Assembly: GCA_965285935.1 (NCBI GenBank)
Contig: OZ260662.1
Coordinates: 79,670,001-79,734,000 of the forward strand
Origin: Ophelia neglecta
Lineage: Eukaryota
Direction: 5' to 3'
Length of the DNA: 64,000 nucleotides
Shown: positions 1 to 63,996 of the stretch, piece by piece
How the letters are laid out: each line of letters begins with the position of its first letter
How positions within the stretch are numbered: position 1 is the first letter of the stretch
Notes under the pieces: model-generated
Databases searched by the model: none
What the model saw: only the letters and a program-made list of their open reading frames with translations
What the model was told of the DNA's origin: nothing
Position numbers and translations under genes: made by a program

Positions 1-886
1 TCACTAAAGCCAGGATCCATCCTCCGTAATGTACTGATGCGCCGTGTGGTCGAGAGAGACAACCGAGATAAAGCGTATGACGGCCCTATCTCGGCCATGA
101 TACATTCTTGCTATAAGTACGGTCTAGATCAGCTGCTGAGGGAATCCGTGTATGAAGGACGGACGCCGAGCAAACTCGTCTGGAAGAGAAGCGTCAAAAG
201 CACAGTGCACAACGTGGCCACTTAACATCTCAGACTGTCCTGCCTTCTCTATCCTAGCACGAAGACTTTCCGGGAGACAGTTAATTCACTAGAGCTGAGT
301 GGGTGGTGGAAGGTAGCACTATCCTCCCCGCAAACACTGCCCGCATGCCGTATCATCCTAAGAATTCTCCTGGATGATCTAGATCTGGAGGTAGTCAGGG
401 GACGACGTGATGGTGTTCCCCGATCGCAAAGACTGTGTAGACTGTGTGAGACTGATGTAGAGGACTCCACGCACTTCCTCTTCATATGCCCTACTTTGGA
501 GAGGATAAGGTGTGTGATACGCCAGATCATGGAGATACCAGCTATACAGTTCCCAGAAGCATTGCATCTTGTGCTTACAGCTTGCGAGAGGCCGGGTGGG
601 GTTGAGGTAGCTAGGGAAGTCCGGCCCTTATACTTAGCAAGGTTAGATGCTATTGTCTCCTCCATTGTGTGGTTCTAAACACCCCCCCCCCCCCAGTTTT
701 CATTTTTCTTTTTTTTTTCAATTTTCATTTTTCATTTTCATTTTCAATTTTGAACTTTATACTTCATTATTTATATAGAGTGGTTAATCGCTGAATTCTA
801 TGTTTGTAAATAGGTTATAATATATAAGGTTATAACATTGTATGTGTATACTCTCCAATCATGGAGGAATAAAGTTAATCAATCAC
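1..886 (+). mobile_element. 3' end of a non-LTR retrotransposon (RTEX-like), decayed ORF2 C-terminus plus tail
   Basis: Frame +1 reads ...KYGLDQLL...PSKLVWKRSVK...*...CRLCETDVEDSTHFLFICPTL... (C-terminal CxxC...HFLxxC Zn motif of LINE ORF2) with an in-frame stop at 223-225. Ends in ATGGAGGAATAAAG followed by an (AATC)n-like tail at ~860-886. Clade assignment is from motif recall only. Confidence 0.65.
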
Positions 887-1477
887 ATCAAGGAGATCTC
901 TGACCTTAAAGCCAATAATGCCTCCCTCACGATGTACGTCAAGTCACTTTAAAATGAGAATAAGATACTGAGAAGTAAGACGCGTGATCTGGAGTTGTAC
1001 ACAAGGAAAAATAATATAGAAATCAAAGGTATGCCCGAAATGGCTGGCGAAAATACTGAGAGTTTGGTAATACAACTGGGTCAAGTTATCGGGAAAACTA
1101 TTGCATCTACAGATATTGAGGCATGTCACCGTGTGAACGTTCCTCCATTGAGCAAGGAACTAAACAGGCCAATTGTTGTGAAATTTTTAAACAGAAAAGA
1201 CAAGTATGACATACTTAAATGCTTCAAAGCTAGACGGGGATCTGGCAACATAACCGCCGAAAAGGTCTCCAGCGACTTCCCTGCAGACGTTAGGGTATTC
1301 ATCAATGAGCACCTTACCCCAGAACTTAAGAGACTACTAGGCAAAACCAGGCAGAGGAAACGTGACAAAAAGTATAGTTACGTGTGGACCAAAGACGGCA
1401 AAATATTTGTGAGGAAAAAGGATGACTCTAGAGCAATTTGTATCCAAAGTGAGGAAGACCTGGAACTTATATGTTAG
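887..1477 (+). pseudogene. LINE ORF1 (coiled coil + L1-ORF1/FP-like RRM and C-terminal domain), 5'-interrupted
   Basis: IKEISDLKANNASL...DLELYTRKNNIEIKGMPE...IEACHRV...RPIVVKF...VFINEHLTP...YVWTKDGKIFVRK, typical of CR1/L2-group ORF1. One in-frame stop in the coiled coil. Confidence 0.8.
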
Positions 1478-1720
1478 ATCCACCTGTGTCAATATTTAGT
1501 CACTTGACACATAGTATGAACACGTATAGACTCTTAACTTAGGTCAATAGGGACCACCGATAAAGGTACGTCTAAATGTCAAAGCTTATTTAATGATGCG
1601 TTCATTCCCGATACAGCTAACTATGAGCCTAATCTTATCAATGACTCTCATTACTATTCTTGTAATATCGAAGACACAAGCTTTGGTTTAATATGCAAAA
1701 CTACTAGTGAAAGTAGCTCG

Positions 1721-4663
1721 TTGACCATACTCAATTTTAATGCCCAAAGCCTTGTAAGAAAGTACGATGAACTTCAAATCATGTTATTCAATTTTAAATC
1801 CGTGCATAATGTGGATATTGATATAATTTGTGTCTTAGAGACTTGGTTGTCAAGGGAAATTGAACAACTAGTCCAGATCCCTGGTTACGACTTAATATGT
1901 AGACACAAGCCTGTTGTAAAAGAGGGCGGTGGTATATGTGTATACGTCCGAGATTCTATCCAATATAAAGTACGAGAAAACCTTAAACTCTAGATAATTA
2001 CTATGACTGTCTTTTCATTGAGGTATCGTCTGTATCTACTATAAAACCATTGGTTATTGGGACAATGTACAGGTCTCCTAGAAGGAACAATATTAGCGAG
2101 TTTATTAGTTCTATTGAAGAACAAATCATTCAGATAGAACGTGAGCGTAAGAACTGTGTACTATGCGGTGATATGAATGTAGATTTATTAAAATGCTCTA
2201 GCAACAGAGAAGTAGGGCTCTATCTAGACATGCTTATCTCTAACTGTTATGTACCACTCATCACGCTCCCTACAAGGGTTACCCCGAATTCTGCCACCCT
2301 CATTGACCATTTATTTTTAAAACATAACCCTCATATTAAATACACTTGTGGTACTTTACTAACCCAGTTTTCAGACCACTTTACTAATTTTCTATTTATC
2401 CATGAAGTGAAACCGGCAGAACTAGTAAAACCTAAATATGTAACCTATAGACCACTGACAAGCACTAACGTCGACTTATTTAATAATAGGTTAAGGGAAG
2501 CTGATTGGAATCAAATCTTGAGTTCTGTTAAAGACAACCCGGACCGGGTATTATATGATACTTTTCTCAGTACATACAACGCAATATTGGACCGTATTAT
2601 TCCTGAAAAGTTCGTCCGCTTTAACAAGTACCGACACAAACAAAATGCATGAATTACTCACGGTATACTTAGGTCCACGCACACAAGAGATTATCTCGCA
2701 CATAAACGAGTCAAAATGAAAGATTCGCCTGATTTCCCTCTTATTAATTCTAATTATCTTCGTTATAGAAAGTTGCTCAACACTGTAATAAAAACTGCCC
2801 AAAGTTCTTACTGGCGGTCCAAATTTGAAGACGCTAAAAATAACATTAAGCAAATCTGGAATAGTATAGGTCTAGTAATGAATAAGAATGGATCTGCTAA
2901 TGTTCAGTCCATTTTCTTTGATGATGACAATAATAAAATTACTGATTCAGCCGAGATTGCAAATAAGTTTAATGAATTTTTCACAAACATCGGCCCGAAA
3001 TTAGCTGGAAACATTACCCCAACAACTAATTATAAATCATATTTGTCTGACCCTTTGACTAACTCTATATTTATGTCAGAGACCAATAGTGAAGAGATTA
3101 TAAAGATTGTTGATGGGATGAAGGCTAAAACTAGTTGTGGTTTTGACAATAATTCTCCTAAATTGCTAAAGTGGACAATACGACCTATATCAAATGTACT
3201 GGCAACTATATTTAATTGTATGCTGAGGGAGGGCACATTTCCTAGGTCTGCCAAAATAGCTAAGGTCATACCTGTGTCTAAGGGTGAAGACGACTCACTC
3301 TTCACGAACTATAGGCCAATCTCTTTACTCCCCGCCGTATCAAAAATCTTCGAGCGTTTATAAAAATAATATACTCTACTCATCCCAATATGGGTTTCGC
3401 ATGAACCATTCGACGGAGCATGCAGCAATTGAACTTGTAGATCATGTGGCTGAGGCCATTGACAAAAGAACTTTCGTGTCTAGTGTTTTTATCGACTTGT
3501 CTAAGGCGTTCGACACGCTGGACCACTCGGTACTAATGTATAAACTAGAACATTATGGTATTAGAGGTAATTGCAAGAAACTTTTAGAAAGCTATTTGTC
3601 AGATCGTTTCCAATTCGTGTCATATAATGGCAAAACTTCTATACCCCTGCCAATTAAGTGCGGCGTTCCCTAAGGGTCTATATTAGGCCCACTTTTATTC
3701 TTGATTTATGTGAACGACCTTTGTCACTCATCAACTTGCGCAAAAATGATACTATTCGCTGATGACACAAGTCTATTATTCGTAAATATTGATTTGATTG
3801 ATTTATTCTATGAAATGAACACAGAATTGGAAACAGTTCATCATTTGTTGAAAGCAAATAGACTATCTCTTAATGTAAAGAAAACGAAGTATATGCTTTT
3901 CCGCTCACGTAATTGCTATCTACCGTTCTATATCAATACGTTGTCCCTATGTTTTAATGGGCAGCAAATAGAAAAAGTTATAGAATTTAAATTCCTGGGC
4001 ATATGGCTGGACGAAAACCTAAACTGGAAGTATAACACTGATATTAAGTGTAAAAAGATAGCACAAGTTAACGGGATACTCAATAGATTGAAATATAAGT
4101 TACCTAGCTACGTACTGAAACTAATTTATTTTGGTCTCATCCATTCCCATATTACATACGGACTCCTGGTTTGGCATAATGATTGCAGTAAACAAAACAT
4201 TGACCGTATCTCTTTATTACAAAAACGCTCTATGCGAATAATTGGTAAAACAAGTTATCTGGCACATACTGAGCCGATCTTTAAAAGCTACGGTATCCTA
4301 AAAGTGGAAGACCTGTACCTCAATATGGGAGCTCGTTTGTACTCGAAAGCTGTTAAGAACAGATGTACTGATTATATTTCTAAAACGCTCTGTGCGAATA
4401 AGTTACCTCACCCTCATAATACGCGGCTTAAGAATAGGCCTAATATAAAACATTTTAAAATGAGGACAAATATTATGAAGCAAACAATTTTATACAAGAT
4501 TAGCAGCATTTATAAGGTTCTTAAAGGTCGCCTTAATATTGATCTTCTTACCTGTAAGGATGTAAAAAAAACTCTAACGTTACTCGAGAGATATCCTAGG
4601 GAATGTGTTGTAAGACGGTGCTACGTGTGTTCTCTTGGACATGACCCAGCTGGTACCAGTTAG
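1721..4663 (+). pseudogene. LINE ORF2: apurinic endonuclease + reverse transcriptase, disrupted
   Basis: APE motifs NAQSL, ETWL, GGGICVYV, GDMN, TLIDH, SDH. RT motifs NYRPISLLP, QYGFR, FIDLSKAFDTLDH, GVP*GSILGP, FADDT, FLGIWLD. Ends in C-x4-CYVC. Lesions: frameshift ~1990, TGA 2650, deletion/frameshift ~3360, TAA 3671. Confidence 0.9.
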
Positions 4664-5763
4664 TATCGTACAGGAACTGGCTGGTGCTATGTGGGCCTAC
4701 ATGTTGACACATTTTGTAAGACTTTTTGTGGCGAAAGCTTTACTCTTATTAATATTTAATCTTGGATTTCTATCAATTAATCAATATTATTCTGTATACA
4801 ATACAATACATACGATTTGTGGCGAAGCTTGACTAATTATGTATATTTATATGTGTTTGTGTCATTGGTGGCGAAGCTTATCAACTTCTATGTTTATTCA
4901 TATATGTATATATATATTTTTTTTCAATGTGTGGCGAAGCATGTATACATGTATGCTAACTGTAATTAATGCCAAAGCTTCACTATTTGTATATTCGACC
5001 AATTCATGTAGCCTGTGGCAAGGCTCTATGGCACGGCTTTATGGTGTACTAAATATCAATATTGTGACAAGACTTGAATATTTATGATTACAGCGTTAAG
5101 GTGTTACAACTTTGTTTTGCGTACTAACATTATATTTCCACATTATAAGGTGTATATATTTAGCCATATCAGTCCTGGTATAGGGATATGCCGGATTATT
5201 ATTATTGTACACTGCTATTTCACCTAGTTAAAACCCGCTATTTGCATGGTAATATTTTTAGCGCAACAGCACATATTACCTAATTTCTTTATTAATGCCG
5301 CTACCATGAAGAAACTATTGACTACTAATTTTCTTATTTATTGTGTTATTTTCAATTATCACATGTTCTTTAATAGTATGTAGTAAAATTTCAATGCCAT
5401 GGGGCGTCCAGTTCCGAACGGCGACCTAGCTATAACTGGCGTCCAGCAACGCATCACCTGTGTTATATAATACTGGTAAACAAGTCCATATTTTTGTATT
5501 TTGTGTTGCAAATAAACTAAACAAATCAAAATCAAATCAGCCCCTAATCGCATAATAAAGGTTTTCTCTGTGTATTTTTGACAACCCAAGATTTGGAGTG
5601 ATTATAATATCATCCATGTGACAGGCCTCTTTAAATCTTGCTTATAACTGCCCTTATCAGGAAAAAGCGTGGTTCAACATTGATGGAAAAAACACTTTAT
5701 TGAAATTCTTATTCTATAAGTAACTATTCTTGTATTGAAATAAAACAAAACACCAAGGTATTA

Positions 5764-5805
5764 ATGTCGAATTTTCGGCAGGCAAGCCTGCCTTCTTCTG
5801 GACTT
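5764..5805 (-). ncRNA. Second copy of the hammerhead-like motif (left arm)
   Basis: Exact reverse complement of 12187-12228. Confidence 0.65.
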
Positions 5806-6503
5806 TATTTAAAATGAAAGGTTTATATTGACTATACACAATGCCTTAGTGACCCTTCCCCTGTGACGATATACCGTGACGTCATACTCAACTATCGCTA
5901 CCTTAATCCACCGAGCAAACTTATCCCTGCCCCTACTTCATGCTCCCCATCACACGGTGGATTTATTATACGGGTCGCTGATAAGATACCCATTGGACCG
6001 GGCAGTCCTCCAGGCTATCCAACAGCGACCCCTAACTACCATTTCTAACTACAAATATCAAAATTTCACACCCTTTAAAAAAAACTTTAGACTAGTTATT
6101 AAGTACTGTAAGAATATCCTTTAGTGTTATTTATTATAGAACCCAATGTTGTCAGCGAGCTACCCAACCCTTAGTCCTCCTGGTATTGGTTATATAGGCA
6201 GGAGGGGGAGGTATGATTTCCTCATTGCTGGAACAACCAGAAGTTTACTCTTCTCGGGATCCATAGTATGGAATAATTAACCTGAGATTATATTTATATA
6301 AATTCATTGACACGGACACCACCTTTAGAATCTAAATCTAAATAGGAAACCGACCATGGATGATAATGCAATTTTAATAGTGAATGACTTTTACACTCTA
6401 ATTGTTAAAGAGCTACTAAAAGTTACAAAATACTATAGTTTGTGTCATACCATTTAATGTTATATTATATTATATTAAATCACGAGGGTAATAAAATCAA
6501 CAC

Positions 6504-9500
6504 TTATTTATTTTTATTTAACCCATTAGGCATTAGAGTTTGAAGTTTCACAATCCATTTACTCTCTGATATTTTTCTAAGCTGTTCTGGTTTTGTGCCC
6601 AAAGCCTCTAAACCCACCACCTTAAAATCCCCCAGGCCATGATCATGTGTGTTAAAATGAACAGCTACCTCGGAAGTATTACATTTTTGTACCCTTACAT
6701 TACTAATATGGTTGTTTAATCTTGTGTATAAATCTGTACCTGTTTCCCCTACATACACTATTTTTGGCACCTAGCACACCATATCCCATATACCGCGTTA
6801 TGCGTCTTACAGTGAATATCCCCAACTATCTGATATTTCTTATCCTTAATTTCAATAAACCGCAATGGAATCATTCTCTTACATAATACACAATGTTTAC
6901 TCCCACATGCCCGTGAACCCTCGTCTTTTCTATAGAACATTTTTTCATGTTTACTATGTACTAATATGTCCGCTATATTTCTATTTCTTTTAAATGACAC
7001 TAAAGGAGGCTTTTTAAAAACCTCCTTACATCTATCTGAATTTTGCAATAATGACATGTTTCTTCTTACAATACCATGAATATTTGGAAGCCAACTTGAA
7101 AAATTTATCACTAACGGAACCCTCACAGTATCATCCCTATTAAGTATTTTTCTGTATCTCAGAAGTTCTACTCTATCCGCACTATCCACCCCCTTAACTG
7201 ACATCCTGAGATGTTTCCCATCATAGCCTCTTTTTTTTCAAATTATTTATCATATTATCTCTATTTTGTCGGTACTTTCCCTCATCACTACAAATCCTTT
7301 TTATTCTTATTGCCTGTCCTTTAGCTAGCCCTTGCTTTACATGTTTAGGATGGTCAGAATCTTCGCGAATGTACAGGTGCCGATCCGTGGGTTTAACAAA
7401 TAAATCTGTCTCTATCTTTGAACCGTTTAAAGTTGTCTTGGTATCTAAAAATTCAACTGTTTCGCCATACCTTAACTCTATTTTAATATTAGGGTGAATA
7501 TCATTAGCCAACCTCCCAAACTCTTCCAGTTCTAACCTTGTCCCGCCCCATAATCCCCAAATGTCATCAACGAATCTATAGAACCCATTAGGCTTTACTT
7601 TCGCTCTTTCTAGTAGCTCTTTCTCCCATTGAATTAAGTAAGCAGAAGCATAATTTTTACCTAGTTTACTGCCTATTGCGGTCCCTACCTTTTGTCTGAA
7701 ATATTTCCCACCGAACTCAAAATAATTGTTTTCCAAAACCAAATCAATCATTTGTAATATTCTTTCTGTAGGTGTGTCTTTGCAACTTCGGCCTTCCAGT
7801 GCTACCTTGCATGCTTCCCTACCTTCCTTACGCGGCACACTAGGGTATAATTTATTTACATCCATACAAAATAATATTGCTTTCTCTGGGATTTCTTTTT
7901 TGTTAAGCTCCTCAATTTTTTGAATAAAGTGTGTCGTGTCTTTTATAAACGTATCTGACTGAACCACAAATTCCTCTAATTCTTTCTCGCAAAATTCTGC
8001 TATGGGGGTAGTTGGATGATTCACTGAACTTATTATTATTCTTAAAGGCTTTTCTGTTTTATGCATTTTTGGATTACCTTTTATTTTCCCATAGTTATAG
8101 TATTTTGGATTAAAATGGCTTTTACTTCCTCTACTGAACTCCTTATTACCAACCTCCCCGTCCAAAAGATTTCTGAGTTTTTTCTTTAGAGTTTTGTCAA
8201 AATTTACTTCCGCTTCTTCATATAAATCGGCATTGTCTAATTCCTCCCTGAGCTTCTGTTCATAATCTTTCCTATTTAATACACATATACCCGAACCTTT
8301 ATCAGCCGGTCTGATGACTATACTGTCATCTTTTAAAATCTCTTTTACTGCACTATGCTCCCGTTTAGTAAGATTGCTATCTATTCCTGACTTCAAATTA
8401 TTTAGGATATCATTTTTTACACTATCGATGTACGCATCTAACCATTTATCCCTGCCGTTCGGTGGTGTCCAAGCACTATTCTTTTTATTCCTAATTTTGA
8501 CATTTCTTCTCCTACTTACCTCTACCGACTCACCTGTTCCTTGCTCATTAACACCTTCATCATAAAAAAATTCTGATAATCTCATTCTCCGTTCCCACTC
8601 CTGTAACTGTTGTTTAATTTCGAAGATGTCCGGTCTGTCCCTACTTGGTATATATTTAAGACCTTTACCAATTACCGATTTTTGTTCATTGGTTAAAACT
8701 TTATCCGATAGGTTAAAAATTGTCGCGTCCTGTCCATTACTCTCTTCTGAACCCTTCCCCGTTTTAGCTCCCCGCACCCGCTTCAGTTTTTTTACTTTTC
8801 GAGCTCCCGCATTTCGCTTACCTTCTGGTTTCAATTCACTATCTTCATTTAAAATTGGATTTACATCATTTAAACTAAGAGCGTCATACCTATTTACATC
8901 TACAAAGTCTTTGGTTCCTGTCTTTATACGCCTTGTCCGTCCGTATCCATTTCGTCTGATTCCTACCAATGTCCACTTATTTATATCCTCTATGTCATTT
9001 GCGTGTTTTGCAGAATCTGTTGTCTTTACCGGTGTTAGAATATTAAAATGTTCATTCTTCAGTCTAAGGTTTATGTCTTTCTGGTTATCTTCTCTATGTC
9101 CGCCATTATATTTGATCCATCGTTTACTTGATTCGCAATACACTTTTATAACTATTCCTAACGAGTCCGCTGTTGCCCCGATCTCACAATCTGTTGCGTA
9201 TGACTCAGTTGATCCGTCCGTTTTCCGCATATCTTCCATATGTTTGGCATTATTACCTGTGAAAAATGATTGGTATGCTACATAATTTTGTTCCATATAA
9301 TCAACCGTTTTGTTCCTAAAATATTTGTGTTTTTCTTCAGTTCCCATCATACACTTACTGATACACCGGTTGCCGTCCCCTTTTACATCTACTATCTGCC
9401 AATCATTGTTATCAAACTTCATACAACCTGTACCTATGTAATCCTCGTTTGTTAAGATAACCTTATTGATCTCTTTGCGTTTTTTCGTTTTATCAACACT

Positions 9501-9844
9501 ATCTTTAACCACAGATCTAAATTTACTTAGCTTTTGGTCAATCTCTTTCGCTGTTAAATATCCGAGCTCATCTACCATACTCTGTCTTCTTTCTTTGATT
9601 TCTTTGCCCAACGTTTCTAGTTTTTCACAGCACGTCTTCACCGCTTCTTCCATTAATCCAATCGATGCCCCTACTAGTATTCTCCTGCATGCTTTTTCCC
9701 TGTCTTCACTCGCATCTAAACATAACCTCCATTTTAATTGAAATCCCCGTGGCACAATCTTTCTCCTAAGGCAATCCTTCAAGTATTCCAGATGGGATCC
9801 ATACTTCTCTTCTTTCGCAATAAAACCTTTCAGTCCGTTGTAAT
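6504..9844 (-). CDS. PLE polyprotein, left arm: N-terminal helical region - OTU-like domain - RT - GIY-YIG (5'-truncated, two homopolymer frameshifts)
   Basis: HLEYLKDCLRRKIVPRGFQLK (Neptune-like N-terminus), IFNLSDKVLT...KGLKYIP, IVIRPADKGSG, PLRIIISS, MDVNKLYPSVP, GTAIGS, FYRFVDDIW, VEFLD, LFVKPTD, CGSKHCVLC linker, VYGIWCARC..YVGETG...RLNNH...VAVHF...E..WI..L.T..PNGLN. Frameshifts at a T8 run (7231-7238) and a T5 run (6761-6765). Confidence 0.9.
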
Positions 9845-11482
9845 AGTTCAGTAGAGGAAGAAAAAGCCATTTTAATCCAAAATACTATAACTATGGGAAA
9901 ATAAAAGGTAATCCAAAAATGCATAAAACAGAAAAGCCTTTAAGAATAATAATAAGTTCAGTGAATCATCCAACTACCCCCATAGCAGAATTTTGCGAGA
10001 AAGAATTAGAGGAATTTGTGGTTGAGTCAGATACGTTTATAAAAGACACGACACACTTTATTCAAAAAATTGAGGAGCTTAACAAAAAAGAAATCCCAGA
10101 GAAAGCAATATTATTTTGTATGGATGTAAATAAATTATACCCTAGTGTGCCGCGTAAGGAAGGTAGGGAAGCATGCAAGGTAGCACTGGAAGGCCGAAGT
10201 TGCAAAGACACACCTACAGAAAGAATATTACAAATGATTGATTTGGTTTTGGAAAACAATTATTTTGAGTTCGGTGGGAAATATTTCAGACAAAAGGTAG
10301 GGACCGCAATAGGCAGTAAACTAGGTAAAAATTATGCTTCTGCTTACTTAATTCAATGGGAGAAAGAGCTACTAGAAAGAGCGAAAGTAAAGCCTAATGG
10401 GTTCTATAGATTCGTTGATGACATTTGGGGATTATGGGGCGGGACAAGGTTAGAACTGGAAGAGTTTGGGAGGTTGGCTAATGATATTCACCCTAATATT
10501 AAAATAGAGTTAAGGTATGGCGAAACAGTTGAATTTTTAGATACCAAGACAACTTTAAACGGTTCAAAGATAGAGACAGATTTATTTGTTAAACCCACGG
10601 ATCGGCACCTGTACATTCGCGAAGATTCTGACCATCCTAAACATGTAAAGCAAGGGCTAGCTAAAGGACAGGCAATAAGAATAAAAAGGATTTGTAGTGA
10701 TGAGGGAAAGTACCGACAAAATAGAGATAATATGATAAATAATTTGAAAAAAAAGAGGCTATGATGGGAAACATCTCAGGATGTCAGTTAAGGGGGTGGA
10801 TAGTGCGGATAGAGTAGAACTTCTGAGATACAGAAAAATACTTAATAGGGATGATACTGTGAGGGTTCCGTTAGTGATAAATTTTTCAAGTTGGCTTCCA
10901 AATATTCATGGTATTGTAAGAAGAAACATGTCATTATTGCAAAATTCAGATAGATGTAAGGAGGTTTTTAAAAAGCCTCCTTTAGTGTCATTTAAAAGAA
11001 ATAGAAATATAGCGGACATATTAGTACATAGTAAACATGAAAAAATGTTCTATAGAAAAGACGAGGGTTCACGGGCATGTGGGAGTAAACATTGTGTATT
11101 ATGTAAGAGAATGATTCCATTGCGGTTTATTGAAATTAAGGATAAGAAATATCAGATAGTTGGGGATATTCACTGTAAGACGCATAACGCGGTATATGGG
11201 ATATGGTGTGCTAGGTGCCAAAAAATAGTGTATGTAGGGGAAACAGGTACAGATTTATACACAAGATTAAACAACCATATTAGTAATGTAAGGGTACAAA
11301 AATGTAATACTTCCGAGGTAGCTGTTCATTTTAACACACATGATCATGGCCTGGGGGATTTTAAGGTGGTGGGTTTAGAGGCTTTGGGCACAAAACCAGA
11401 ACAGCTTAGAAAAATATCAGAGAGTAAATGGATTGTGAAACTTCAAACTCTAATGCCTAATGGGTTAAATAAAAATAAATAA
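9845..11482 (+). CDS. PLE polyprotein, right arm: 5'-truncated RT + GIY-YIG (one A8 frameshift)
   Basis: ORFs 9919-10764 and 10781-11482 are essentially identical to the left arm. Removing one A at 10747-10754 restores NLKKRGYDGKHL (conserved PLE RGY motif) and fuses RT with the endonuclease. Confidence 0.9.
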
Positions 11483-12186
11483 GTGTTGATTTTATTACCC
11501 TCGTGATTTAATATAATATAATATAACATTAAATGGTATGACACAAACTATAGTATTTTGTAACTTTTAGTAGCTCTTTAACAATTAGAGTGTAAAAGTC
11601 ATTCACTATTAAAATTGCATTATCATCCATGGTCGGTTTCCTATTTAAATTTAGATTCTAAAGGTGGTGTCCGTGTCAATGAATTTATATAAATATAATC
11701 TCAGGTTAATTATTCCATACTATGGATCCCGAGAAGAGTAAACTTCTGGTTGTTCCAGCACTGAGGAAATCATACCTCCCCCTCCTGCCTATATAACCAA
11801 TACCAGGAGGACTAAGGGTTGGGTAGCTCGCTGACAACATTGGGTTCTATAATAAATAACACTAAAGGATATTCTTACAGTACTTAATAACTAGTCTAAA
11901 GTTTTTTTTAAAGGGTGTGAAATTTTGATATTTGTAGTTAGAAATGGTAGTTAGGGGTCGCTGTTGGATAGCCTGGAGGACTGCCCGGTCCAATGGGTAT
12001 CTTATCAGCGACCCGTATAATAAATCCACCGTGTGATGGGGAGCATGAAGTAGGGGCAGGGATAAGTTTGCTCGGTGGATTAAGGTAGCGATAGTTGAGT
12101 ATGACGTCACGGTATATCGTCACAGGGGAAGGGTCACTAAGGCATTGTGTATCTATATAGTCAATATAAACCTTTCATTTTAAATA

Positions 12187-12228
12187 AAGTCCAGAAGAAG
12201 GCAGGCTTGCCTGCCGAAAATTCGACAT
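12187..12228 (+). ncRNA. Minimal type I hammerhead-ribozyme-like motif in PLE 3' repeat (non-canonical core)
   Basis: GTC-CAGAAGA-A-GGCAGG(CTTG)CCTGCC-GAAA-ATTC-GAC: stem I GTC/GAC, CUGANGA box read as CAGAAGA, 6-bp stem II, GAAA box, palindromic AATT mini-stem III, putative UUC cleavage triplet. Position at the PLE terminus matches known PLE hammerheads. Confidence 0.65.
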
Positions 12229-13576
12229 TAATACCTTGGTGTTTTGTTTTATTTTAATATTATATTGTTACGATTGATTCTAATTCTTGTATTGGATATA
12301 TAATTTGTAATATTGATACAGAATTATGATAATACTATACATTTCTATAGTAGGCCTATAATATAATTACTAATGCACGTGAAATACTATCGAATTATAT
12401 TAAAAATATAATAATAATAATTATACTATCATATTTCAAGTAGGCCCTATAATTTAATTGTAATTCTCTAAAATATATAACTAAAAGTATTTTAAATGTA
12501 ATATATTGAAACAATGAAAGCTAAGTACATGCATTGTAACAACTGGATATCTTTTTTTTGCTACTAATATTTAGAGGCCCTATAGAATTTTTCACTTTTC
12601 AAACTAATAACGATTTATAATACTCGTGATATAATATTTATTAGTCATACATGTTTATAGTATTATATTATAGATAAGATTTTGCATTAATTATAGTTTT
12701 ATAATGGTATCATAAATATCTTTTCAAATGTATTTCTAACCACTTTAGAATTAGGCCTATATAATCAGTAAAATGTTTGCATACTCATGAAAGTATCCAA
12801 TTGATACCATAGCAATAATTAGTATATTGAAAACCTTTTATTAGTACATGTATGATATTCTTTTATTACTTCTTATTGTCAAGCAGTTTATCAAATGCAC
12901 CATTATACGGACCTAGAACCAGAGCATGCCTCGATCTCTACCGAGTCATTTGAAGGGGGTGCATGGGGCACCTGTTTTGTGTTAATTCGCTGAGAGCGGT
13001 GAAGTAGAATTTTTTTAGCCTATATCGGTACAATAGGGGACAACAGGTCATTAGGGCAATATTTAACAGTTTTCTGAGAATTTTCGGTGAATTAAATTTA
13101 TTTATTTATTTGGTGACCGAAAATGGAGTGCGGCGATATATCTTTTTAATTTATTCTTAGGACGGAAGTAAAAAGGGGGTGCGTGGTTTCTCAATGGGTC
13201 CAAGCCCCCCCCCCCCCCCGCCCAACCCACCCACCCACCCCCAGAAACCGCCACTGAAATTTATTTATTGGCCTTTATATTACATAAATAGAGGGGCTTA
13301 CACCGTCTCGATCTGCACGAGATGGGTAATTTTACTGCTGGCTGTCACATTGGGGTTGAAGCAAGAACAGTTTACCTCATTTGCTTGTTTCCATGCCCTC
13401 CTATATTATCTCCAGCTCTGATAGGGCCTATTTTCCCAGTTTGTACTTCTTTTATTTTGCAAAATCACCTAAACCAGGGGCACCCCCCCCCCCATCGGGC
13501 ATATTTATGAACCTTCCCTAAAGCCCTTGTATTCACGTTAGGTGTCGCTGTACGCTGTTCCTGAGTAACTTCATAA

Positions 13577-28595: not shown

Positions 28596-31500
28596 GAGGC
28601 AACCCGGGGAAGTTCGGACACCGGGGATGTTCGGACACTTATCTTTTATGTAGTAGAACTTTGTGGGTGTTGGAATAAATCCTTTGCCGTGACCACATGA
28701 CTATTCTTGAGTTGTTTATTTATATTAGGGATTCCCCAACAATGAACTATCTGATTTGGTACGGGTTATGTCATTGGCTAAATTTGGATTGCGTCACAGG
28801 AGATGCCAGTCTCTGAAATCTGGCGGGATTCCCTGCCCCAGTTCTTGTAGGAGGTCACCAGTCATAAGCGGGTCATGATTAATACATGGCAAACATAGGA
28901 ATTTTTACTGATGTAATTAATTTATACAAATAGATAGGGCTCACATATTTCGTAAAGCGGAGACATTCAAGTTACAGTTACTTCAGGTATATTGAAAATA
29001 AAAAGTGTACATGGGTAAATTCGGACAAGATGGAATTTACAGGTTGTAATAGGCAGGAAGCAATTGTATATCCTCACCTAAGGGACATTTAGTGTCTATA
29101 TGAGCATTCCTGGGCAATATCGATAGATTTGATATTTAAATTCCTGCCGATGATTACGGAGAATCATCGAAATCCTATACTCAATCGCCAAGGGAGAGCC
29201 GCATTATGGTCATGTACTGATGTATTTTCAGGTCCAATATTCCACTTTTACTATCAGAGTCATCAAAAATTCCAGATCCCCCGTATTCCTACGTTCTGAA
29301 CTTGGCTCAGCATGGCAAAATAAGCATGCTGCTAGAAGATAATACCTTCTTGTTTAAGTTAAGGAACTACAAGAAAACAATATAGGCCTATATGTTTCCT
29401 TTGGGAGGTTGAAATCCTAAATAATTGTGTGAATTTCTGAAAGAATCCAATCATCACAAAGGGAATTTTCCCCTTTGTCCCACTGATCGATGGCGGGTTA
29501 AAATTAACCGGCGCATAATCGAACTCAACATTTCAATGTAAATATATGAGTTAAATTTCTGCAGGCTTTTATCTCGATAGAAACTACAAACTTAATTATT
29601 GGATAGGAGAATTATTTATTTCCATTAGATCATCATGGGGAGAAAGTCGAAGGACGTTTATCAACAATACGAAAGGAAAACGTTGAAAATGCTACCGCTG
29701 CTGTGCGCGGAGGGTTATCCCTCAGAAAGGCTGTGCACAGCTCAATTTGGGGTGCCGAAATCAACATTGAGTGACAGGGTCAGCGGGAAGAGCAATGAAG
29801 GGACGAAAATGGGGAGGCCAACAGTTTTCTCCAAAGATATAGAAGACCGAATTGCTAAAAATGTTAAAGAGGCTGCTGAAAGTGGTTTTGGACTAAGCCG
29901 GCAACAACTCGCTTGCAAGGCTAGCCAAATTGCCACCAATTTTAAAATAAAAACATTTAAAAATGGTATTCCAGGTGATGAATGGCTGTCTCGCTTCAAA
30001 AGGGACCACAACTTGTCCACCAAAAAGCCTCTAGGCCTTAGTGGTACCAGGGCCAGGATGATGAACCAGGTTGTAGTGGGGAAGTACTTCGATGATTTAG
30101 AAGGCATCCTTGATAGCTTGAACCTTAAAGGCAAACCGCACTTAGTGTGGAACATGGATGAAACTAATGTCTCTTTAACACATAAAAGTTCGAAGGGGAT
30201 TGCCGAAAGAGGGACAAAAAACATACCAGCACGCACCGGAAATTGTCGGGAAAACATCACTGTGTTGGTGAACATAAACGCTGCAGGCCGGTCAATACCG
30301 CCAATGTCTATTGTGAAGGGCAGCACTGTACAAAGTCTGAGGGCTCATAACACATCTGAGGCACCAAATGGGACGGTGTTCACCTACCAGAAAAAAACAT
30401 GGATGGAAAGCCTTCTATGTGAGTTGTGGTTCGAAGACCACTTCCTCAAAAACTGTGGTCCAGAGCGCCCGCAGCTCATCTTGTTGGATTCTCATATTTC
30501 CCATGAAACTATCGGCCTGATTGGGAAGGCCAGAGACAATGGAATTCACCTTCTCACATTTCCCCCTCACACAACTACTGGCTTTGTCCACTGGACAAAA
30601 CTATTTTCTCAGCCCTAGACGCTGCATACAACAGAGTATGCAGTGAGTTCATGGCAAGTAGCCCAAACAATCTTAATTGTCGCAAAATGGTTTTGGCCGG
30701 GTTTATTCCGTGAGGCATACGCAAGGGCTGTTACCCCCGATAACATAATCTCTGGGTTCAAGAAATGTGGTATTTTCCCCCTAGATATGGATGCCATACC
30801 TAAGCAAGCTTTTTGTCCATCGCTAATGTATGATCTACCTGATCCCACTTCCACATCTTCCGTTGACATGGTTATCCAGCAAGCGACAGCGCCCACACCC
30901 ACTGCCAGAAGTCAGTACCCCACCACTGCTGTTCATCACGCTTCACCACCAGCTGCTAGCCCTGCTGCACTTCGCCTCACCTCTACAGCGTCTTCAAGCG
31001 CCGGTGTTCCTCTCACCCCTGATCCACCGTCTGCTTCAGCTTCAGCCAAGGCCCATCTTCCCCTCACTATTGCTGTTACTCCATCCTGTGTCTCTAGACC
31101 AGCACAACCTTTCTTCTCAAGCACACCTTCGGGCTCAGCTACTATCTCTGCCTCTTCTCCGTCCACCATATCTGCATCTCTGGGTTCTCCACCTAGTGCA
31201 GACACTGCATCAGCTGTTCCTGGTATTTCACAACACCCTCCTGAATGCCTTTTCGATATAGGAGATGTTAGGCAGGATATAGAATTTCAAACAGATCCTT
31301 TCCTTCCACCCTCCACAATGAATGACACTGCTTTGGAGGAACTTTTAAATGTGGACCTGGCTCAGTAAGAGAAAAGCAACGTCTCATTATCCAATGTCGC
31401 AGGAGATGCCCATATTTTCACGGCTGATTTACTCTTGCGCGCCCTATCAGAGGGTGACAAAATCACTTTACATCCCGTGACCGATGGTGTTAACACAGTT

Positions 31501-48791: not shown

Positions 48792-49949
48792 ATGATGAGT
48801 ACGACCAGATGGAGAATGGCGATAAACAGACTTGCCACCTGCGATCTCCAGCGTTATTTTAACATCATCGCTTTCATTCAATTGGTTGGTCTGATATTCT
48901 CAATCATTCGAATAAACAATGGCCTGGCGACGGTTTCCAATCAGTCCAAGGGCAGGGGGAATTTCTCGCAGCGACCGCTGAACCTACACCCGCTGAAAGC
49001 TTGTGAATGGTCTGACAAAATCACTGACCCTGTCTACGCGGGTCCCCCTAAGTCTACATATCCATGGGTCTCTTCTCACAAACTGCCAAGAACCCTCACT
49101 AATGGCGAGTACGAACAATACATTAATTTGTTGGGAGCTACGGCTATTATTCTCAGTCAAGCCAATGTAACGTATGTGATGGGATATGGCACTTTGATGG
49201 GATCTTACGTCATGCACGACCTGGTACCCTGGGGCGATGATGCCGCCATCATGATCAAAACAACGGATGTGCTGAAAGTGATTAACGTGTTTAAAAACGA
49301 ATCTCTACGTAAACGATTTAATATCACGGGGTTTTATAATCCTACAGATACTTTCACAAAAGCAGCGCTTAAAAGTTCGACCGATGGAATGAACTTAGCA
49401 AATGAATGGAGAAAGATAAAAAAGACCATGCAAGAAACAAGTTTAGCGGAATTGTCAGATTTAGATTACTTTCTGAACTTCAAAATATGTTTCGTTGAAG
49501 GTGGAAAACACATTGGTAAGAAGTCTTTGAAATGGCCGGTTATCGGTGTAAATTACTTCTTAGAAAATGATTCGCATGTTTGGTACTTGGATTCTCGCGC
49601 CAAATTGATCACTTTTACTCGAGATTCGTTCTACCCTGTGTACTATCGTCCTTTGGGTCGACTCCGACTGCCGGCTCCGTATGATACTGCCTCTGTCTTA
49701 CGCCAGGAATACGGGAGGTTCCATTGCCAGACATCGCGCTGGAACAACAGGCTGGAAGTAGGGAGGCGGAAATCGTCAGCGAAGTGTTCGTCATTGAGAA
49801 ATGTCTACCCGTTTGTCCGAAGACAAATGATTGATAACAATATTATTGTGGAAAGGAAAATGATTGGTCTAAAATCCTATAGTACTTTCTGTCGAAAGAG
49901 GGGGTCTTTCACGTCTAAAACGTCATCTGAACCGCAATGGGGATTTTAA
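48792..49949 (+). CDS. LicD/fukutin-family nucleotidyltransferase-fold protein, type II membrane anchor, single exon
   Basis: 385-aa ORF; N-terminal hydrophobic anchor YFNIIAFIQLVGLIFSII; YVMGYGTLMGSYVMHDLVPWGDD resembles LicD GTLLG...IPWDDDxD; KWPVIGVNYF; FYPVYYRPLGRLRLPAP...L..EYG...C; C..L...YPFV. Confidence 0.8.
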   Translation: MMSTTRWRMAINRLATCDLQRYFNIIAFIQLVGLIFSIIRINNGLATVSNQSKGRGNFSQRPLNLHPLKACEWSDKITDPVYAGPPKSTYPWVSSHKLPRTLTNGEYEQYINLLGATAIILSQANVTYVMGYGTLMGSYVMHDLVPWGDDAAIMIKTTDVLKVINVFKNESLRKRFNITGFYNPTDTFTKAALKSSTDGMNLANEWRKIKKTMQETSLAELSDLDYFLNFKICFVEGGKHIGKKSLKWPVIGVNYFLENDSHVWYLDSRAKLITFTRDSFYPVYYRPLGRLRLPAPYDTASVLRQEYGRFHCQTSRWNNRLEVGRRKSSAKCSSLRNVYPFVRRQMIDNNIIVERKMIGLKSYSTFCRKRGSFTSKTSSEPQWGF

Positions 49950-61195: not shown

Positions 61196-62458
61196 TTATT
61201 ATATCGACAAAACAAACTCATTGCACAAGTCGACTAGGTTTTATCAGGTCTGTGTATGATTGTTACCATTTGCGTGTACTCGTATCAGGTGTTACTTTTT
61301 CGTATCAGGTATGAATTAATGTTAAAAGTTTATGATTTATAAGATGATTATATGTAATTGGTTATGTTATGAGTAATATCTTGTTGAATTTTGTTTGTAT
61401 TCGGAAAGCGTTGCCTGTGGAGAGTTATTCATATGTCTATGGCATGGTGTGCTAACTAAACACAAGCCAACATATGTATCCATAAGAGATTAGCGATGCC
61501 TACATTATAGCCGTTGTGGCTGACAAGATTTTCACACTAATAAACATCTTCAGCACACAAATTTACAAACAATCCTTGCAGTTTTAAACGAAATTTCAGC
61601 TGTATTAATTTTTTGCAAATATTGTTAATGAAGAGTTGGTAAAACAGACCTCCGTCTAATTTTCAAACACTAATGAACACATTCATAACCAAACACTTTA
61701 AATCTGATTGATGGGTTAATTTATTATCTAATAAATTTTACAAATAATAAAACAAATACAAATTCATAAAAAAAAAAAATACTATGATAAATGAGACCTC
61801 GGCCTATAAATTTATTAAAAGGAAAAAACTTTTGGATTTGAATGTTTGGCGAACGTTGTGGAGAAAGCAGCATTTGCAGCAACTGATTGTACTATTTATG
61901 TCCTTTAATAGAGACCAATATACTTCTTTCGTCACAGCTTGCGCAGTTTCACAAAGCCATCCATGACATTAAATTAAATAATACAAGAAATTCAACCTTT
62001 TTGCAGGACACTTTAATGGACAGTTAGAAAGAGGTCCACAGAAAAATTAAATGTAGTTGTATTATACTTGATTTGCACCATAACGAAAATTCCCTTTTTG
62101 AAAAGTTTCCATATTTTCATTGAGTTTTCTATAATGATTAAAGATAATTTGTCAGGATATAGATAATAAAAACATTTTTCGGTTTTCTTGTACCTATGGC
62201 TTCATACATATATTATAAACATTATATAACTAACTTCTGGCTAAAATAGAATACCCCTTAAGTAGAAGGCCAAAAGCGTCATACTTTAGTTTGACGTGAA
62301 TAACAAGAGTAAAGACAGATCATAGGAGAGAGAATATTTGTTTTTTCTTCAAGTAAAGTATACAATCATGGTATTTTGGTATGCTGTCTGGAAAAAGTTT
62401 AAACTCAAATGCTACTAGTTATTGTGTTAAGTATACTCTATTCATCCTTGTTTTTCAG

Positions 62459-63996
62459 TGATTCGACATCCATCCCGTATTATATTGGGTGTGATCGTGC
62501 CTTTTCTCCTGACGACAGCGCTATTGCCTTCCCGCCGGTTTCAGAACACCATTACAGAAATGGAAATGGTCAATGTCCAATATGGGAGACCAGGGTGGAT
62601 GAAAATACAAACAGAGGGCTCCAGGCTACAATCGAACGGACAGGCCTTTTTTCTGGATTCGTCCAGGAACATCAAATTCACAGATGGCCGTACCAACTTT
62701 GCCAACTTCCAAGAAGCCCTAGAGGCCAGATCAGACCCACACAAGGTCATTATAATGGCCCTTATAGACATGGGAGCTCTCGCGATGGGTCTGAATTTCT
62801 GGGAGACTTCTTTGGTACCAAATAACATCCAAACCTATTTATTTATTTCCTCGAGCACAGAGGCGTGCCAGCATCTTTATCGAAAGATGATTCCTTGTTT
62901 CGTGTACATGGAAGATGAGGCAGGAGGGAGTAAGTCGCTGTACAAGAGTGCTGAGTTCCTGAGGAAGATGAATATCAGATCGTATATGATTCTGAACGCT
63001 CTCAAGTTGGGGTATACAGTGTTACACACTGATGTTGACGTTGTTTGGTTTAAAAACCCCTTTCATTACATTCCATGCAATCAGTGCGATGTGGCCGCCC
63101 TGTGGGACTGTGGTGCATGGAATGCAGGCTTTATCTTCGTTCGACCTACACCAGGTGGGATGAGTATATACCAAAAAATGGTGACTATTGCAGAAAAAAC
63201 TACAATAGACGACCAAAAAGCGCTTAATATTGCCGTGCAGGCTGCCAAAAGAAATAGCTCATTTGATCTTGTCAAACTACCCCCAAGGCTGTTTCAATGT
63301 GGTTTTGATTATTTTGAGAAAGGGAAAAGGGATTTTGCCGGTGAGGTGCCGTGTGAACAATGTGTCGTTGTTCACAACAACTGGATTGTAAGCATGGAAG
63401 CGAAAATCTACCGTTCTAGGGAACTGCATCATTGGATGTATGATGATGATGCTTACTACAGTGATTTGAGTAGAAAATACATCGTTTTTAACAATTCTGC
63501 CATCGGGAAGAATATTTCCGAGACAAAAAATCTTGAGAAAAGCAGCCTTCGAAGTGCCCTGGCTATTGGACATATACTAAATAGAACAGTTATATTGCCA
63601 GTATTCCACCTTACTCAGAAGAGAAAAGGGTCCTTGTTACACCACCTGAAAATAAGGGAACTAGACTCGCAGTTTTTCGGAAAGTATAGAGAACACACAT
63701 TTTTGTCCAATAGAAAAGTACCTCTCGCGGTACAAAACAATCGCACCAAGGCTTTTCGCATCAATAGCAAAATTAGCCACCAGGGTTCACATGCTGATTT
63801 TCATTTCAACCCACGAGACCACAAGGGAGCTTCTGATAGTGAAATTAAACAATGGTTCGGAGGCATGACTGAGTCCATTCTTGTATTCCAATCCCTGTAT
63901 CAAGCCTTCTCGACTTTTGTAGATTTACAAATGCAGGAAGAGTTTGAACAGAAAATCGCAAAGGGTTTGCGACCGGCGAAATACCGCCAATTTTAA
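62459..63996 (+). CDS. Nucleotide-diphospho-sugar transferase (PF03407/GT77, XEG113-like architecture), large terminal exon
   Basis: Splice acceptor TTTTTCAG at 62458, so the true start probably lies in an upstream exon that I could not locate. TM anchor IILGVIVPFLLTTALL; LGYTVLHTDVDVVWFKNP (DxD), NAGFIFVRPT, DDQKALN, VVVHNNW..KIYR.RE..HWMYD, then ALAIGHILNRTVILP. Confidence 0.88.

What the first reader, a model, noticed from the sequence alone, without database searches (positions are those of the whole stretch)
9030..9405. Penelope-like retroelement with an OTU deubiquitinase-like domain inside its RT-endonuclease ORF
Seen: between the Neptune-like N-terminal helical region and the canonical NLS..L..KGL.Y.P motif, the open frame contains WQIVDVKGDGNRCISKCM...HKYFRNKTVDYM...YQSF...MRKTDG...YATDCEIGATADSLGIVIKVY...INLRLKNEHFNIL. 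Established: this follows the OTU cysteine-protease pattern (GDGNC box, central W/Y-x4-E helix, terminal L-x4-H-F/Y). Viral OTUs counter ubiquitin-based defence, and PLE ORFs are normally described as RT + GIY-YIG only. Inference: this PLE lineage captured an OTU module, possibly to shield its RNP from ubiquitin-dependent restriction or to process its polyprotein. I do not recall OTU being a described PLE feature, but could not check the literature.
Basis: partly seen in the sequence, partly recalled or inferred. Interest (0 to 1): 0.8.

Follow-up and report, generated by a model that had tools for sequence, protein, structure and literature searches.

The report
OTU protease domain in Penelope retroelements
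A group of Penelope-like jumping genes in this animal genome, and in other genomes, carries a ubiquitin-removing (OTU) protease fused in front of its reverse transcriptase, an accessory domain I could not find described for this class; the copy in this window is a dead one that has lost the catalytic cysteine.

Summary
The ORF (7221-9782) is on the minus strand. It matches Pfam OTU above the curated cut-off; the domain spans about 8991-9431. "GDGNRC" is not an intact GDGNC box: this copy alone has a 9-nt deletion that removes Cys-Phe-Phe, including the catalytic Cys. It is also 5'-truncated, frameshifted twice, and joined head-to-head to an inverted partial copy.

The domain is not a one-off. 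Sixteen of 17 full-length OTU segments fetched from this genome keep the DGNC and His boxes. Two sister copies have uninterrupted 1123-codon frames. At least three further families here (33-47% OTU identity, synonymous sites saturated) share the same layout: helical N-terminus, OTU, disordered basic linker, RT, Cys-rich linker, GIY-YIG. So do proteins from other samples, including a 53-member cluster from an Acipenser sinensis assembly. Asp, Cys and His are invariant across them.

The AF2 model matches OTUD5, OTUD1, OTUD3 and viral OTUs (TM 0.71-0.75).

Full-text searches found no paper linking OTU to Penelope-like elements. OTU is known in Helentrons and Ginger1, and Josephin-like proteases in Dualen and one Chlamys PLE. 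I therefore rate it a new variant of a known kind. Function is untested.

Another first-stage note (s1-743260) flagged the same kind of element elsewhere in this genome.

The parts
5733..9845 (-). Near-full-length but defective copy of the OTU-bearing Penelope-like element (family A). It maps to nt 22-3369 of the sister ORF plus the 3' UTR, so the first 7 codons (including the ATG) and everything upstream are missing.
9432..9845 (-). N-terminal helical region. In the full-length sister model this is three long helices, aa 6-137.
8991..9431 (-). OTU cysteine-protease domain. The His box NEHFN is present; the Cys box is damaged.
   Evidence: Pfam; family profile; PDB profile; fold
9369..9370 (-). 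Site of the 9-nt in-frame deletion that removes Cys-Phe-Phe (the catalytic Cys). It is private to this copy.
8718..8990 (-). Variable, Lys/Arg-rich linker between OTU and RT. It is NLS-like in composition and predicted disordered (pLDDT about 25 in the sister model).
7224..8717 (-). PLE N-terminal motifs (FNLS...KGLKYIP), the reverse transcriptase (RPADKGSG, FVDD) and the thumb.
7238..7238 (-). Extra A in an A-run relative to the sister copies. It shifts the frame between RT and the endonuclease part and is shared by both arms of the inverted repeat.
6504..7204 (-). Cys-rich linker (C-x4-C-x2-C) and the GIY-YIG endonuclease. The region is split into two frames by a missing A at about 6766, in this arm only.
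5733..6503 (-). 3' UTR / pseudo-LTR part. It has 99 nt (6400-6498) that the sister copies lack.
5773..5800 (-). Hammerhead-like motif near the 3' end. This subfamily reads CAGAAGA...GAAAAUUC; the sisters read CUGAAGA...GAAAUUUC.
   Evidence: no Rfam match
9845..12259 (+). Inverted, 5'-truncated second copy (sister ORF nt 1736 to the end, plus the 3' UTR). It abuts the first copy head-to-head with no spacer. The arms are about 100% identical apart from a 1-nt and a 6-nt indel.
12192..12219 (+). The same hammerhead-like motif in the inverted arm.

Best explanation
Window 5733-12259 holds a head-to-head pair of copies of a Penelope-like retroelement (PLE). The single ORF of this family reads: a three-helix N-terminal region, an OTU-family cysteine isopeptidase domain, a roughly 100-aa disordered Lys/Arg-rich linker, the PLE reverse transcriptase, a Cys-rich C-x4-C-x2-C linker, and a GIY-YIG endonuclease. 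The OTU module is an old, inherited part of this PLE lineage and not a recent capture. It is kept under selection in several families and in other genomes. Most likely mechanism (inferred, about 0.5-0.6): the domain is an active deubiquitinase or ubiquitin-like hydrolase of the OTUD type. Translated in cis with RT-EN, it would strip ubiquitin or a ubiquitin-like modifier from the element's own protein/RNP, or from nearby host factors. That would protect the element from proteasomal turnover or ubiquitin-dependent restriction during target-primed reverse transcription. This parallels viral OTUs and the roles proposed for the OTU, Ulp1 and Josephin domains of Helentron, Ginger1, Mutator and Dualen elements. 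The copy in the window is dead: it is 5'-truncated, lacks the catalytic Cys, and has two frameshifts.
For: Shown:
- Domain identity. Pfam OTU scores above the cut-off in the window copy and more strongly in sister copies (E 5e-11 to 2e-10). A profile of PLE OTU domains hits OTUD5 (E 6e-13), OTUD1, OTUD3 and nairovirus L OTU over the whole domain. The AF2 model (pLDDT 79.9) matches OTUD5, OTUD1 and OTUD3 at TM 0.71-0.75 and probability 1.00.
- Copies in this genome. 37 OTU-region matches. Of 28 OTU segments found in the fetched loci, 17 are full-length OTU segments without stops, and 16 of those keep the DGNC and His boxes. Two copies have uninterrupted 1123-codon frames, and a 3748-bp tandem array holds 1197-aa open frames (1195-aa ORF).
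- Other samples. Full-length relatives at 34-43% identity with the same architecture come from Logan, ENA and JGI samples. A 53-member NCBI cluster is labelled Acipenser sinensis; its 1123-aa member P0015 is 37% identical end to end.
- Conservation. Asp164, Cys167 and His276 are invariant across 11 sequences.
- Constraint. Between families, synonymous sites are saturated (pS 0.78-0.85) while OTU pN is 0.33-0.48.
- Modularity. In the full-length model OTU is a discrete globular module between low-confidence linkers.
- Extent of the extension. An OTU-less PLE protein (P0009) aligns from aa 381 onward, so the helical region, OTU and linker form an extension of about 380 aa.
From the literature: ubiquitin-pathway proteases are recurrent TE accessory domains (PMC2836005; PMC6431247; PMC8557442).
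Against: Within family A the OTU domain has too few variable sites for a selection test (5 shared and 6 singleton changes, p = 0.25-0.32), so the evidence for constraint rests on the between-family comparison. The substrate (ubiquitin, ISG15-, NEDD8- or SUMO-like modifier, or the element's own polyprotein) cannot be read from sequence. PLE RT matches with about 878-aa open frames, which have no OTU hit, appear to coexist in this genome (not fetched), so OTU is not needed by PLEs in general.
Confidence: 0.55

Rival explanations
1. The OTU domain is mainly a cis- or trans-acting processing protease. It would cut the single polyprotein in the flexible linkers, releasing the N-terminal helical (ORF1-like) part from RT-EN, as arterivirus PLP2 and tymovirus PRO do for their polyproteins. 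This does not exclude deubiquitinase activity.
For: The domain sits exactly between a helical N-terminal module and RT, flanked by long low-confidence linkers (aa 130-151 and 284-383). According to the Fig. 1 legend of PMC8557442, other PLEs can have ORF1 separated by a frameshift, so separating the two parts is a known need. That some viral OTU-fold proteases do both jobs is established knowledge, not tested here.
Against: No conserved Gly-Gly or other cleavage-like motif is visible in either linker across 11 sequences; both linkers are highly variable in length and sequence. The closest solved relatives are dedicated deubiquitinases (OTUD5, OTUD1, OTUD3).
Confidence: 0.25
2. The domain is a non-catalytic relic or ubiquitin-binding module. 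It would be kept only for folding or binding, or simply not yet decayed.
For: The window copy shows that the catalytic box can be lost. The within-family selection test on OTU is not significant.
Against: Asp, Cys and His are invariant across families whose synonymous sites are saturated, and across genomes. Sixteen of 17 full-length OTU segments keep both boxes. The only copy without the Cys is otherwise broken.
Confidence: 0.07
3. The fusion is an artefact: a fragment of another OTU-bearing transposon (Ginger1 or Helitron type) or of a host OTU gene happened to insert into this one PLE copy, or the region was misassembled.
For: The genome is full of other repeated OTU-bearing ORFs: 111 Pfam OTU matches, including identical 1090-aa frames and a 2214-aa array.
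Against: The same in-frame architecture occurs in many copies on several chromosomes, in at least four divergent families, and in unrelated samples. A search with the family-A OTU recovers PLE-linked copies and not the other OTU families seen with Pfam.
Confidence: 0.02

Closest known systems
Neptune-type Penelope-like elements (C-terminal EN+ PLEs; Arkhipova 2006, cited from Craig et al. 2021, PMC8557442)
   Same: Single ORF with PLE N-terminal motifs. RT carries the DKG-type motif (RPADKGSG). A C-x(2-5)-C-x2-C linker lies upstream of a C-terminal GIY-YIG endonuclease that has two Cys between GIY and YIG. Partial tandem (pseudo-LTR) and inverted insertions occur, 5' truncation is frequent, and a minimal hammerhead-like motif sits near the 3' end.
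   Different: It has an extra N-terminal extension of about 380 aa containing an OTU protease domain. Neither the text nor the Fig. 1 legend of the 2021 survey of PLE architectures mentions such a domain. Clade placement here rests on motifs only, not on an RT tree.
OTU accessory domains of Helentron/Helitron2 and Ginger1 DNA transposons (PMC6431247; PMC2836005)
   Same: A Pfam PF02338 OTU cysteine-protease domain is fused to the transposition protein of a mobile element in aquatic invertebrates. Its role is unknown but presumed to involve the ubiquitin pathway.
   Different: Those are DNA transposons (Rep/helicase or DDE integrase-like). Here the carrier is a retroelement, with OTU N-terminal to an RT. 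The family-A OTU query did not retrieve the genome's other OTU families.
Josephin-like cysteine protease in Dualen non-LTR elements and in Chlamys-1_cBra PLE (PMC8557442)
   Same: A deubiquitinase-class cysteine protease serves as an accessory domain of a retroelement, one of them a PLE. The proposed role is interference with protein degradation.
   Different: It is a different protease family (Josephin, not OTU), at a different position (a C-terminal extension in Chlamys), in a different PLE clade (N-terminal EN, in the plant Chara) and with only weak homology.
Cellular OTUD5/DUBA, OTUD1 and OTUD3, and viral OTUs (nairovirus L, iridovirus 232R, baculovirus VP80 N-terminus)
   Same: The fold is shared (TM 0.7-0.75), as are the Asp-Gly-Asn-Cys box at the start of the first helix and the C-terminal His-aromatic-Asn box.
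   Different: Sequence identity is only about 20%. The domain is embedded in a retrotransposon polyprotein, and there are no UIM or other ubiquitin-binding accessory motifs.

Membership tests
OTU cysteine proteases (Pfam PF02338 / MEROPS C85) | Sequence match above the curated Pfam threshold | tested here: met
   Window copy 26.9 bits against a 23.3-bit cut-off. Sister copies 42-44 bits and family B 41.9 bits. External relatives 30-42 bits.
OTU cysteine proteases (Pfam PF02338 / MEROPS C85) | Catalytic Cys in the D-G-N-C box at the N-terminus of helix 1 | tested here: met
   Met for the lineage: it is invariant in 11 sequences and in 16 of 17 full-length OTU segments. NOT met for the window copy, where a 9-nt deletion removes Cys-Phe-Phe.
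OTU cysteine proteases (Pfam PF02338 / MEROPS C85) | Catalytic His in the C-terminal strand (H-F/Y-N/D/S box) | tested here: met
   His276 is invariant. The box reads NEHFN in the window copy.
OTU cysteine proteases (Pfam PF02338 / MEROPS C85) | OTU fold | tested here: met
   The AF2 model has pLDDT 79.9. Foldseek finds OTUD5, OTUD1 and OTUD3 at E about 4e-9 and TM 0.71-0.75.
OTU cysteine proteases (Pfam PF02338 / MEROPS C85) | Isopeptidase activity on ubiquitin or ubiquitin-like modifiers | not testable with these tools
   This needs biochemistry.
Penelope-like elements, EN+ with C-terminal GIY-YIG | PLE-type RT with N-terminal motifs and a DKG motif | tested here: met
   FNLS...KGLKYIP, WERRMRL and RPADKGSG are conserved. 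The protein is 26% identical over 785 aligned columns (aa 381-1120 of the sister protein) to the OTU-less RT + GIY-YIG protein P0009. Precomputed Pfam families DUF8422 and HTH_animal are shared with it.
Penelope-like elements, EN+ with C-terminal GIY-YIG | C-terminal GIY-YIG endonuclease with two Cys between GIY and YIG (CCHH type) | tested here: met
   Pfam GIY-YIG scores 24.5-26.9 bits against a 22.6-bit cut-off. The sequence reads VYGIWCARCQKIVYVGET followed by His residues.
Penelope-like elements, EN+ with C-terminal GIY-YIG | Pseudo-LTR, partial tandem or inverted insertion structure, and 5' truncation | tested here: met
   The window has an inverted pair. Tandem units are 4077 bp (L021), 3748 bp (L023) and 4485 bp (L027, another sample). 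The criterion comes from PMC8557442.
Penelope-like elements, EN+ with C-terminal GIY-YIG | Hammerhead ribozyme motif in the pseudo-LTR | tested here: inconclusive
   Sister copies carry GUC-CUGAAGA-A-(6-bp helix II)-GAAA-UUUC-GAC about 70 nt upstream of the ATG and again near the 3' end. [quoted passage not shown] However, no Rfam model scores it, the window subfamily has A at core position 4, and I found it only in family A.
Neptune clade of PLEs | C-x(2-5)-C-x2-C Zn-finger-like linker between RT and EN | tested here: met
   CGSKHCVLC is present in families A and B and in the external relatives. The criterion is from PMC8557442. It is shared with the Nematis and Naiad clades, so it is not sufficient alone.
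Neptune clade of PLEs | Placement within Neptune in an RT phylogeny with reference elements | not tested

The most novel reading that the evidence does not exclude
OTU-bearing PLEs form one old clade that spans distant animal groups, from this invertebrate-like genome to a fish assembly. Their deubiquitinase activity would be required for retrotransposition because it counters a ubiquitin-dependent host restriction of the RT-EN protein or RNP. That would make them retrotransposons encoding their own anti-ubiquitin counter-defence, analogous to viral OTUs.
Probability: 0.3. Interest if true: 0.75.

Novelty: new variant of a known kind. Interest (0 to 1): 0.55.

Why it matters
PLEs are usually drawn as RT plus GIY-YIG, with little known about how they deal with the host cell. 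A conserved, catalytically intact deubiquitinase-type domain in a multi-family, multi-genome PLE lineage would add PLEs to the mobile elements that carry ubiquitin-pathway proteases (Helentrons, Ginger1, Mutator and Dualen). It would also strengthen the idea that ubiquitin-dependent control is a general pressure on transposition. It gives a compact, testable domain of about 140 aa for asking what such proteases do for a transposon. For annotation, it warns that OTU hits in invertebrate and fish gene sets can be retroelement ORFs; one cluster is deposited as hypothetical proteins of a sturgeon assembly.

Tried and rejected
- A word search restricted to the OTU region of the 1123-aa protein gave nothing. 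The whole-protein search then found the relatives, and a profile search added little.
- Pfam PF28514 and PF26215 are not in the local library for genome search.
The roughly 878-aa presumed OTU-less PLE copies and the other repeated OTU ORFs (1090-aa and 2214-aa frames) could not be fetched, so I could build no RT tree testing whether OTU+ elements form one clade.
- The ESM Atlas fold library was not available.
- Rfam gave no hammerhead hit, even on a 171-nt slice.
- The within-family synonymous/non-synonymous test on OTU is under-powered. Between-family dN/dS cannot be computed because dS is saturated, so only pN against pS is reported.
- I did not run the exhaustive protein-representative search.
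- Arkhipova 2006 (Syst Biol) is not held in the library, so I could not check whether it mentions OTU.
Full report
**What is in the window**

The plus-strand translation of 9030-9405 is full of stops. Pfam finds an OTU-like cysteine protease domain (PF02338) at aa 139-221 of this ORF, with E 7.5e-6 and 26.9 bits against a curated cut-off of 23.3. It finds a GIY-YIG domain in the downstream ORF fragments.

**Anatomy of the locus**

Window 5733-8140 and 9845-12259 are inverted repeats at about 100% identity.
- The minus-strand copy maps to nt 22-3369 of the sister ORF plus the 3' UTR.
- The plus-strand copy is 5'-truncated at ORF nt 1736 and abuts the first copy head-to-head without a spacer.
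- Complex tandem and inverted insertions are a described property of PLEs (PMC8557442). An earlier follow-up in this scan reached the same view for another locus of this genome (s1-735129).

**The window copy is broken**

Compared with two sister copies elsewhere in the genome (about 97.9% identical), it has five differences:
- It lacks the ATG, the first 7 codons and everything upstream.
- It has a 9-nt in-frame deletion between bases 9370 and 9369, turning GDGNCFFRCISKC into GDGN-RCISKC. This deletes the catalytic Cys.
- It has an extra A at 7238, shared by both arms, that separates RT from the endonuclease frame.
- It lacks an A at about 6766, in the minus arm only, which splits the GIY-YIG region.
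- It carries 99 extra nt in the 3' UTR.

The deletion is private to this copy. Another copy of the same subfamily (L002) and all other full-length OTU segments keep DGNC.

**The domain is not a one-off**

A search of the whole genome (762 Mb, 223 contigs) with the OTU region gave 37 matches.
- Family A, the window's family, has copies on at least five chromosome-size contigs. Two of them have uninterrupted 1123-codon frames running from the N-terminus through OTU, RT, the Cys-rich linker and GIY-YIG.
- Family B, 42-43% identical over the whole protein, forms a tandem array of 3748-bp units with a 1195-aa ORF (1197-aa open frame). Families C and D are further divergent versions.
- In the loci I fetched there are 28 distinct OTU segments. 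Seventeen are full-length OTU segments without stops, and 16 of those have both the DGNC box and the His box.

**Relatives outside this genome**

The word-index protein search found full-length relatives at 34-43% identity, plus shorter fragments, whose precomputed Pfam architecture is OTU + DUF8422 + HTH_animal. They come from Logan runs SRR5028119 and SRR28400133, several ENA assemblies, a JGI metagenome, and NCBI.
- The NCBI cluster has 53 members. Every named member listed is labelled [quoted passage not shown], on contigs up to 4.4 Mb.
- Its 1123-aa member P0015 is 37% identical to the family-A protein from end to end. It includes DGNCFFRC, the His box, the RT, the C-x-C-x2-C linker and GIY-YIG.
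- One external contig shows the PLE-type tandem frame, with direct repeats 4485 bp apart around the ORF.

**Is the OTU domain functional in the lineage?**

Across 11 sequences the invariant columns include Asp164, Gly165, Asn166, Cys167, Arg170, Cys171 and His276, in family-A numbering.
- A profile of the PLE OTU domains hits solved OTUD5 (E 5.8e-13), OTUD1, OTUD3 and nairovirus L-protein OTUs over the full domain, aligning the Cys and His boxes.
- An AF2 model of the sister domain (mean pLDDT 79.9, pTM 0.76) matches OTUD5/DUBA, OTUD1, OTUD3, viral OTUs and yeast Otu1 by Foldseek, at probability 1.00 and TM 0.7-0.75. Predicted viral OTU folds match at similar levels.
- Between families, synonymous sites are saturated (pS 0.78-0.85) while non-synonymous divergence in OTU is 0.33-0.48. 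For RT, pS is 0.84-0.89 and non-synonymous divergence is 0.22-0.33. OTU is therefore constrained, though less so than RT.
- Within family A the whole-ORF pN/pS between the window subfamily and the sisters is 0.15. Shared substitutions in RT are strongly biased to synonymous (16 against 7, p = 3e-7). The OTU segment has only 11 variable sites, and the test is not significant. I report that as under-powered, not as support.

**Architecture**

An OTU-less PLE protein (P0009, RT + GIY-YIG, 767 aa) aligns with the family-A protein from aa 381 onward, starting just before the FNLS...KGLKYIP motif. The OTU lineage therefore has an N-terminal extension of about 380 aa. The full-length AF2 model is only moderately confident overall (mean pLDDT 66). 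It shows:
- three long helices (aa 6-137);
- a low-confidence hinge;
- a compact OTU module (about aa 156-282);
- a roughly 100-aa stretch at pLDDT about 25 (aa 284-383) that is Lys/Arg-rich and highly variable between families;
- then RT and the endonuclease.

OTU is thus a discrete module on flexible tethers.

**Clade**

The C-x4-C-x2-C linker and the two Cys between GIY and YIG fit the Neptune/Nematis type. They do not fit Penelope/Poseidon, which lacks the linker finger, or Hydra, which lacks CCHH, by the criteria in PMC8557442. I could not run an RT phylogeny with reference elements, so "Neptune-like" rests on motifs only.

The RT profile search of the genome shows a second tier of matches at about 300 bits. 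These have 878-aa open frames at places with no OTU match in either OTU search. OTU-less PLEs therefore probably coexist here, but I could not fetch them.

**Mechanism**

Shown: the lineage encodes an OTU-fold domain with an intact, conserved Asp/Cys/His set, translated in one frame with RT-EN.

Inferred: it is an active isopeptidase. Its nearest solved relatives are dedicated deubiquitinases, so I rate deubiquitination (or removal of a ubiquitin-like modifier) from the element's own protein/RNP or neighbouring host factors as the most likely role, at about 0.55. This is the same kind of role proposed for OTU and Ulp1 in Ginger1 and Mutator, and for Josephin in Dualen (PMC2836005; PMC8557442).

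The main rival, at about 0.25 and not exclusive, is polyprotein processing in the flanking linkers. The position between a helical ORF1-like part and RT favours it. The absence of any conserved cleavage-like motif in those linkers argues against it. A relic or non-catalytic role, and an artefactual fusion, are both poorly compatible with the conservation and copy data.

**Novelty**

Eight full-text searches found no paper linking OTU to Penelope-like elements.
- The 2021 survey of PLE architectures never mentions OTU, and its Fig. 1 legend lists no such domain.
- That survey does report other accessory domains in PLEs: PHD, SAP, and a weak Josephin-like cysteine protease motif in a Chara Chlamys element.
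- OTU domains are established accessories of Helentrons and Ginger1 transposons.
- Arkhipova 2006 and Repbase could not be checked.

I therefore rate this as a new variant of a known kind, with perhaps 0.6-0.7 probability that it is undescribed. Another first-stage note of this scan (s1-743260) flagged a PLE with an OTU domain on another piece of the same genome, consistent with the copies I found.

**Limits**

There is also no RT tree and no biochemistry.

Noticed in passing
L021:5216-5243 and L021:9293-9320; window 5773-5800 (-) and 12192-12219 (+): A hammerhead-like motif lies in the pseudo-LTR of family A: GUC-CUGAAGA-A-GGCAGG-CUUG-CCUGCC-GAAA-UUUC-GAC. The window's subfamily (also L002 and L016) instead reads CAGAAGA (A at core position 4) and GAAAAUUC, which makes positions 15.1-16.1 the palindrome AAUU. 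No Rfam model scores either form.
   Followed up: partly
G000 C2:79501066, C2:91332046, C9:58530355, C12:29646394 (1090-aa open frames); C19 array of about 2214-aa frames: The genome holds many other repeated ORFs with a Pfam OTU domain (111 matches in all). The family-A PLE OTU query did not retrieve them, so they are probably other OTU-bearing mobile elements or gene families.
   Followed up: no
G000 C8:83079927-83084019, C7:33177443, C2:88474188, C9:10040005: PLE RT matches at about 300 bits with roughly 878-aa open frames and no OTU hit nearby. These are probably OTU-less PLE families coexisting with the OTU-bearing ones.
   Followed up: no
G000 C8:12038051-12051688 (L023, L017-L020, L036-L039): At least four head-to-tail units of a second OTU-PLE family form a tandem array with a 3748-bp period. 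Several units have uninterrupted open frames of about 1197 aa.
   Followed up: partly
window 3701-4663 (+): A 320-aa ORF has a weak RVT_1 match below the Pfam cut-off (21.2 bits against 29.6). It is probably a fragment of another retroelement just upstream of the PLE pair.
   Followed up: no
window 29635-30618 (+): A 327-aa ORF carries the Tc5 transposase HTH and DDE_1 domains, marking it as a pogo/Tc5-type DNA transposon remnant.
   Followed up: no
window 48792-49949 (+) and 62458-63996 (+): Two ORFs match sugar-transferase families: LicD (24.1 bits) and nucleotide-diphospho-sugar transferase (PF03407, E 9e-26). The second runs to within a few bases of the window's end.
   Followed up: no
window 5700-5745 (-) versus 12260-12300 (+): Just outside the two arms, the flank of the minus copy (caatacaagaat) is the reverse complement of a stretch about 26 nt further out on the plus-copy flank. 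The plus arm also continues about 25 nt further into pseudo-LTR sequence than the minus arm. The exact outer ends and any target-site duplication were not resolved.
   Followed up: no
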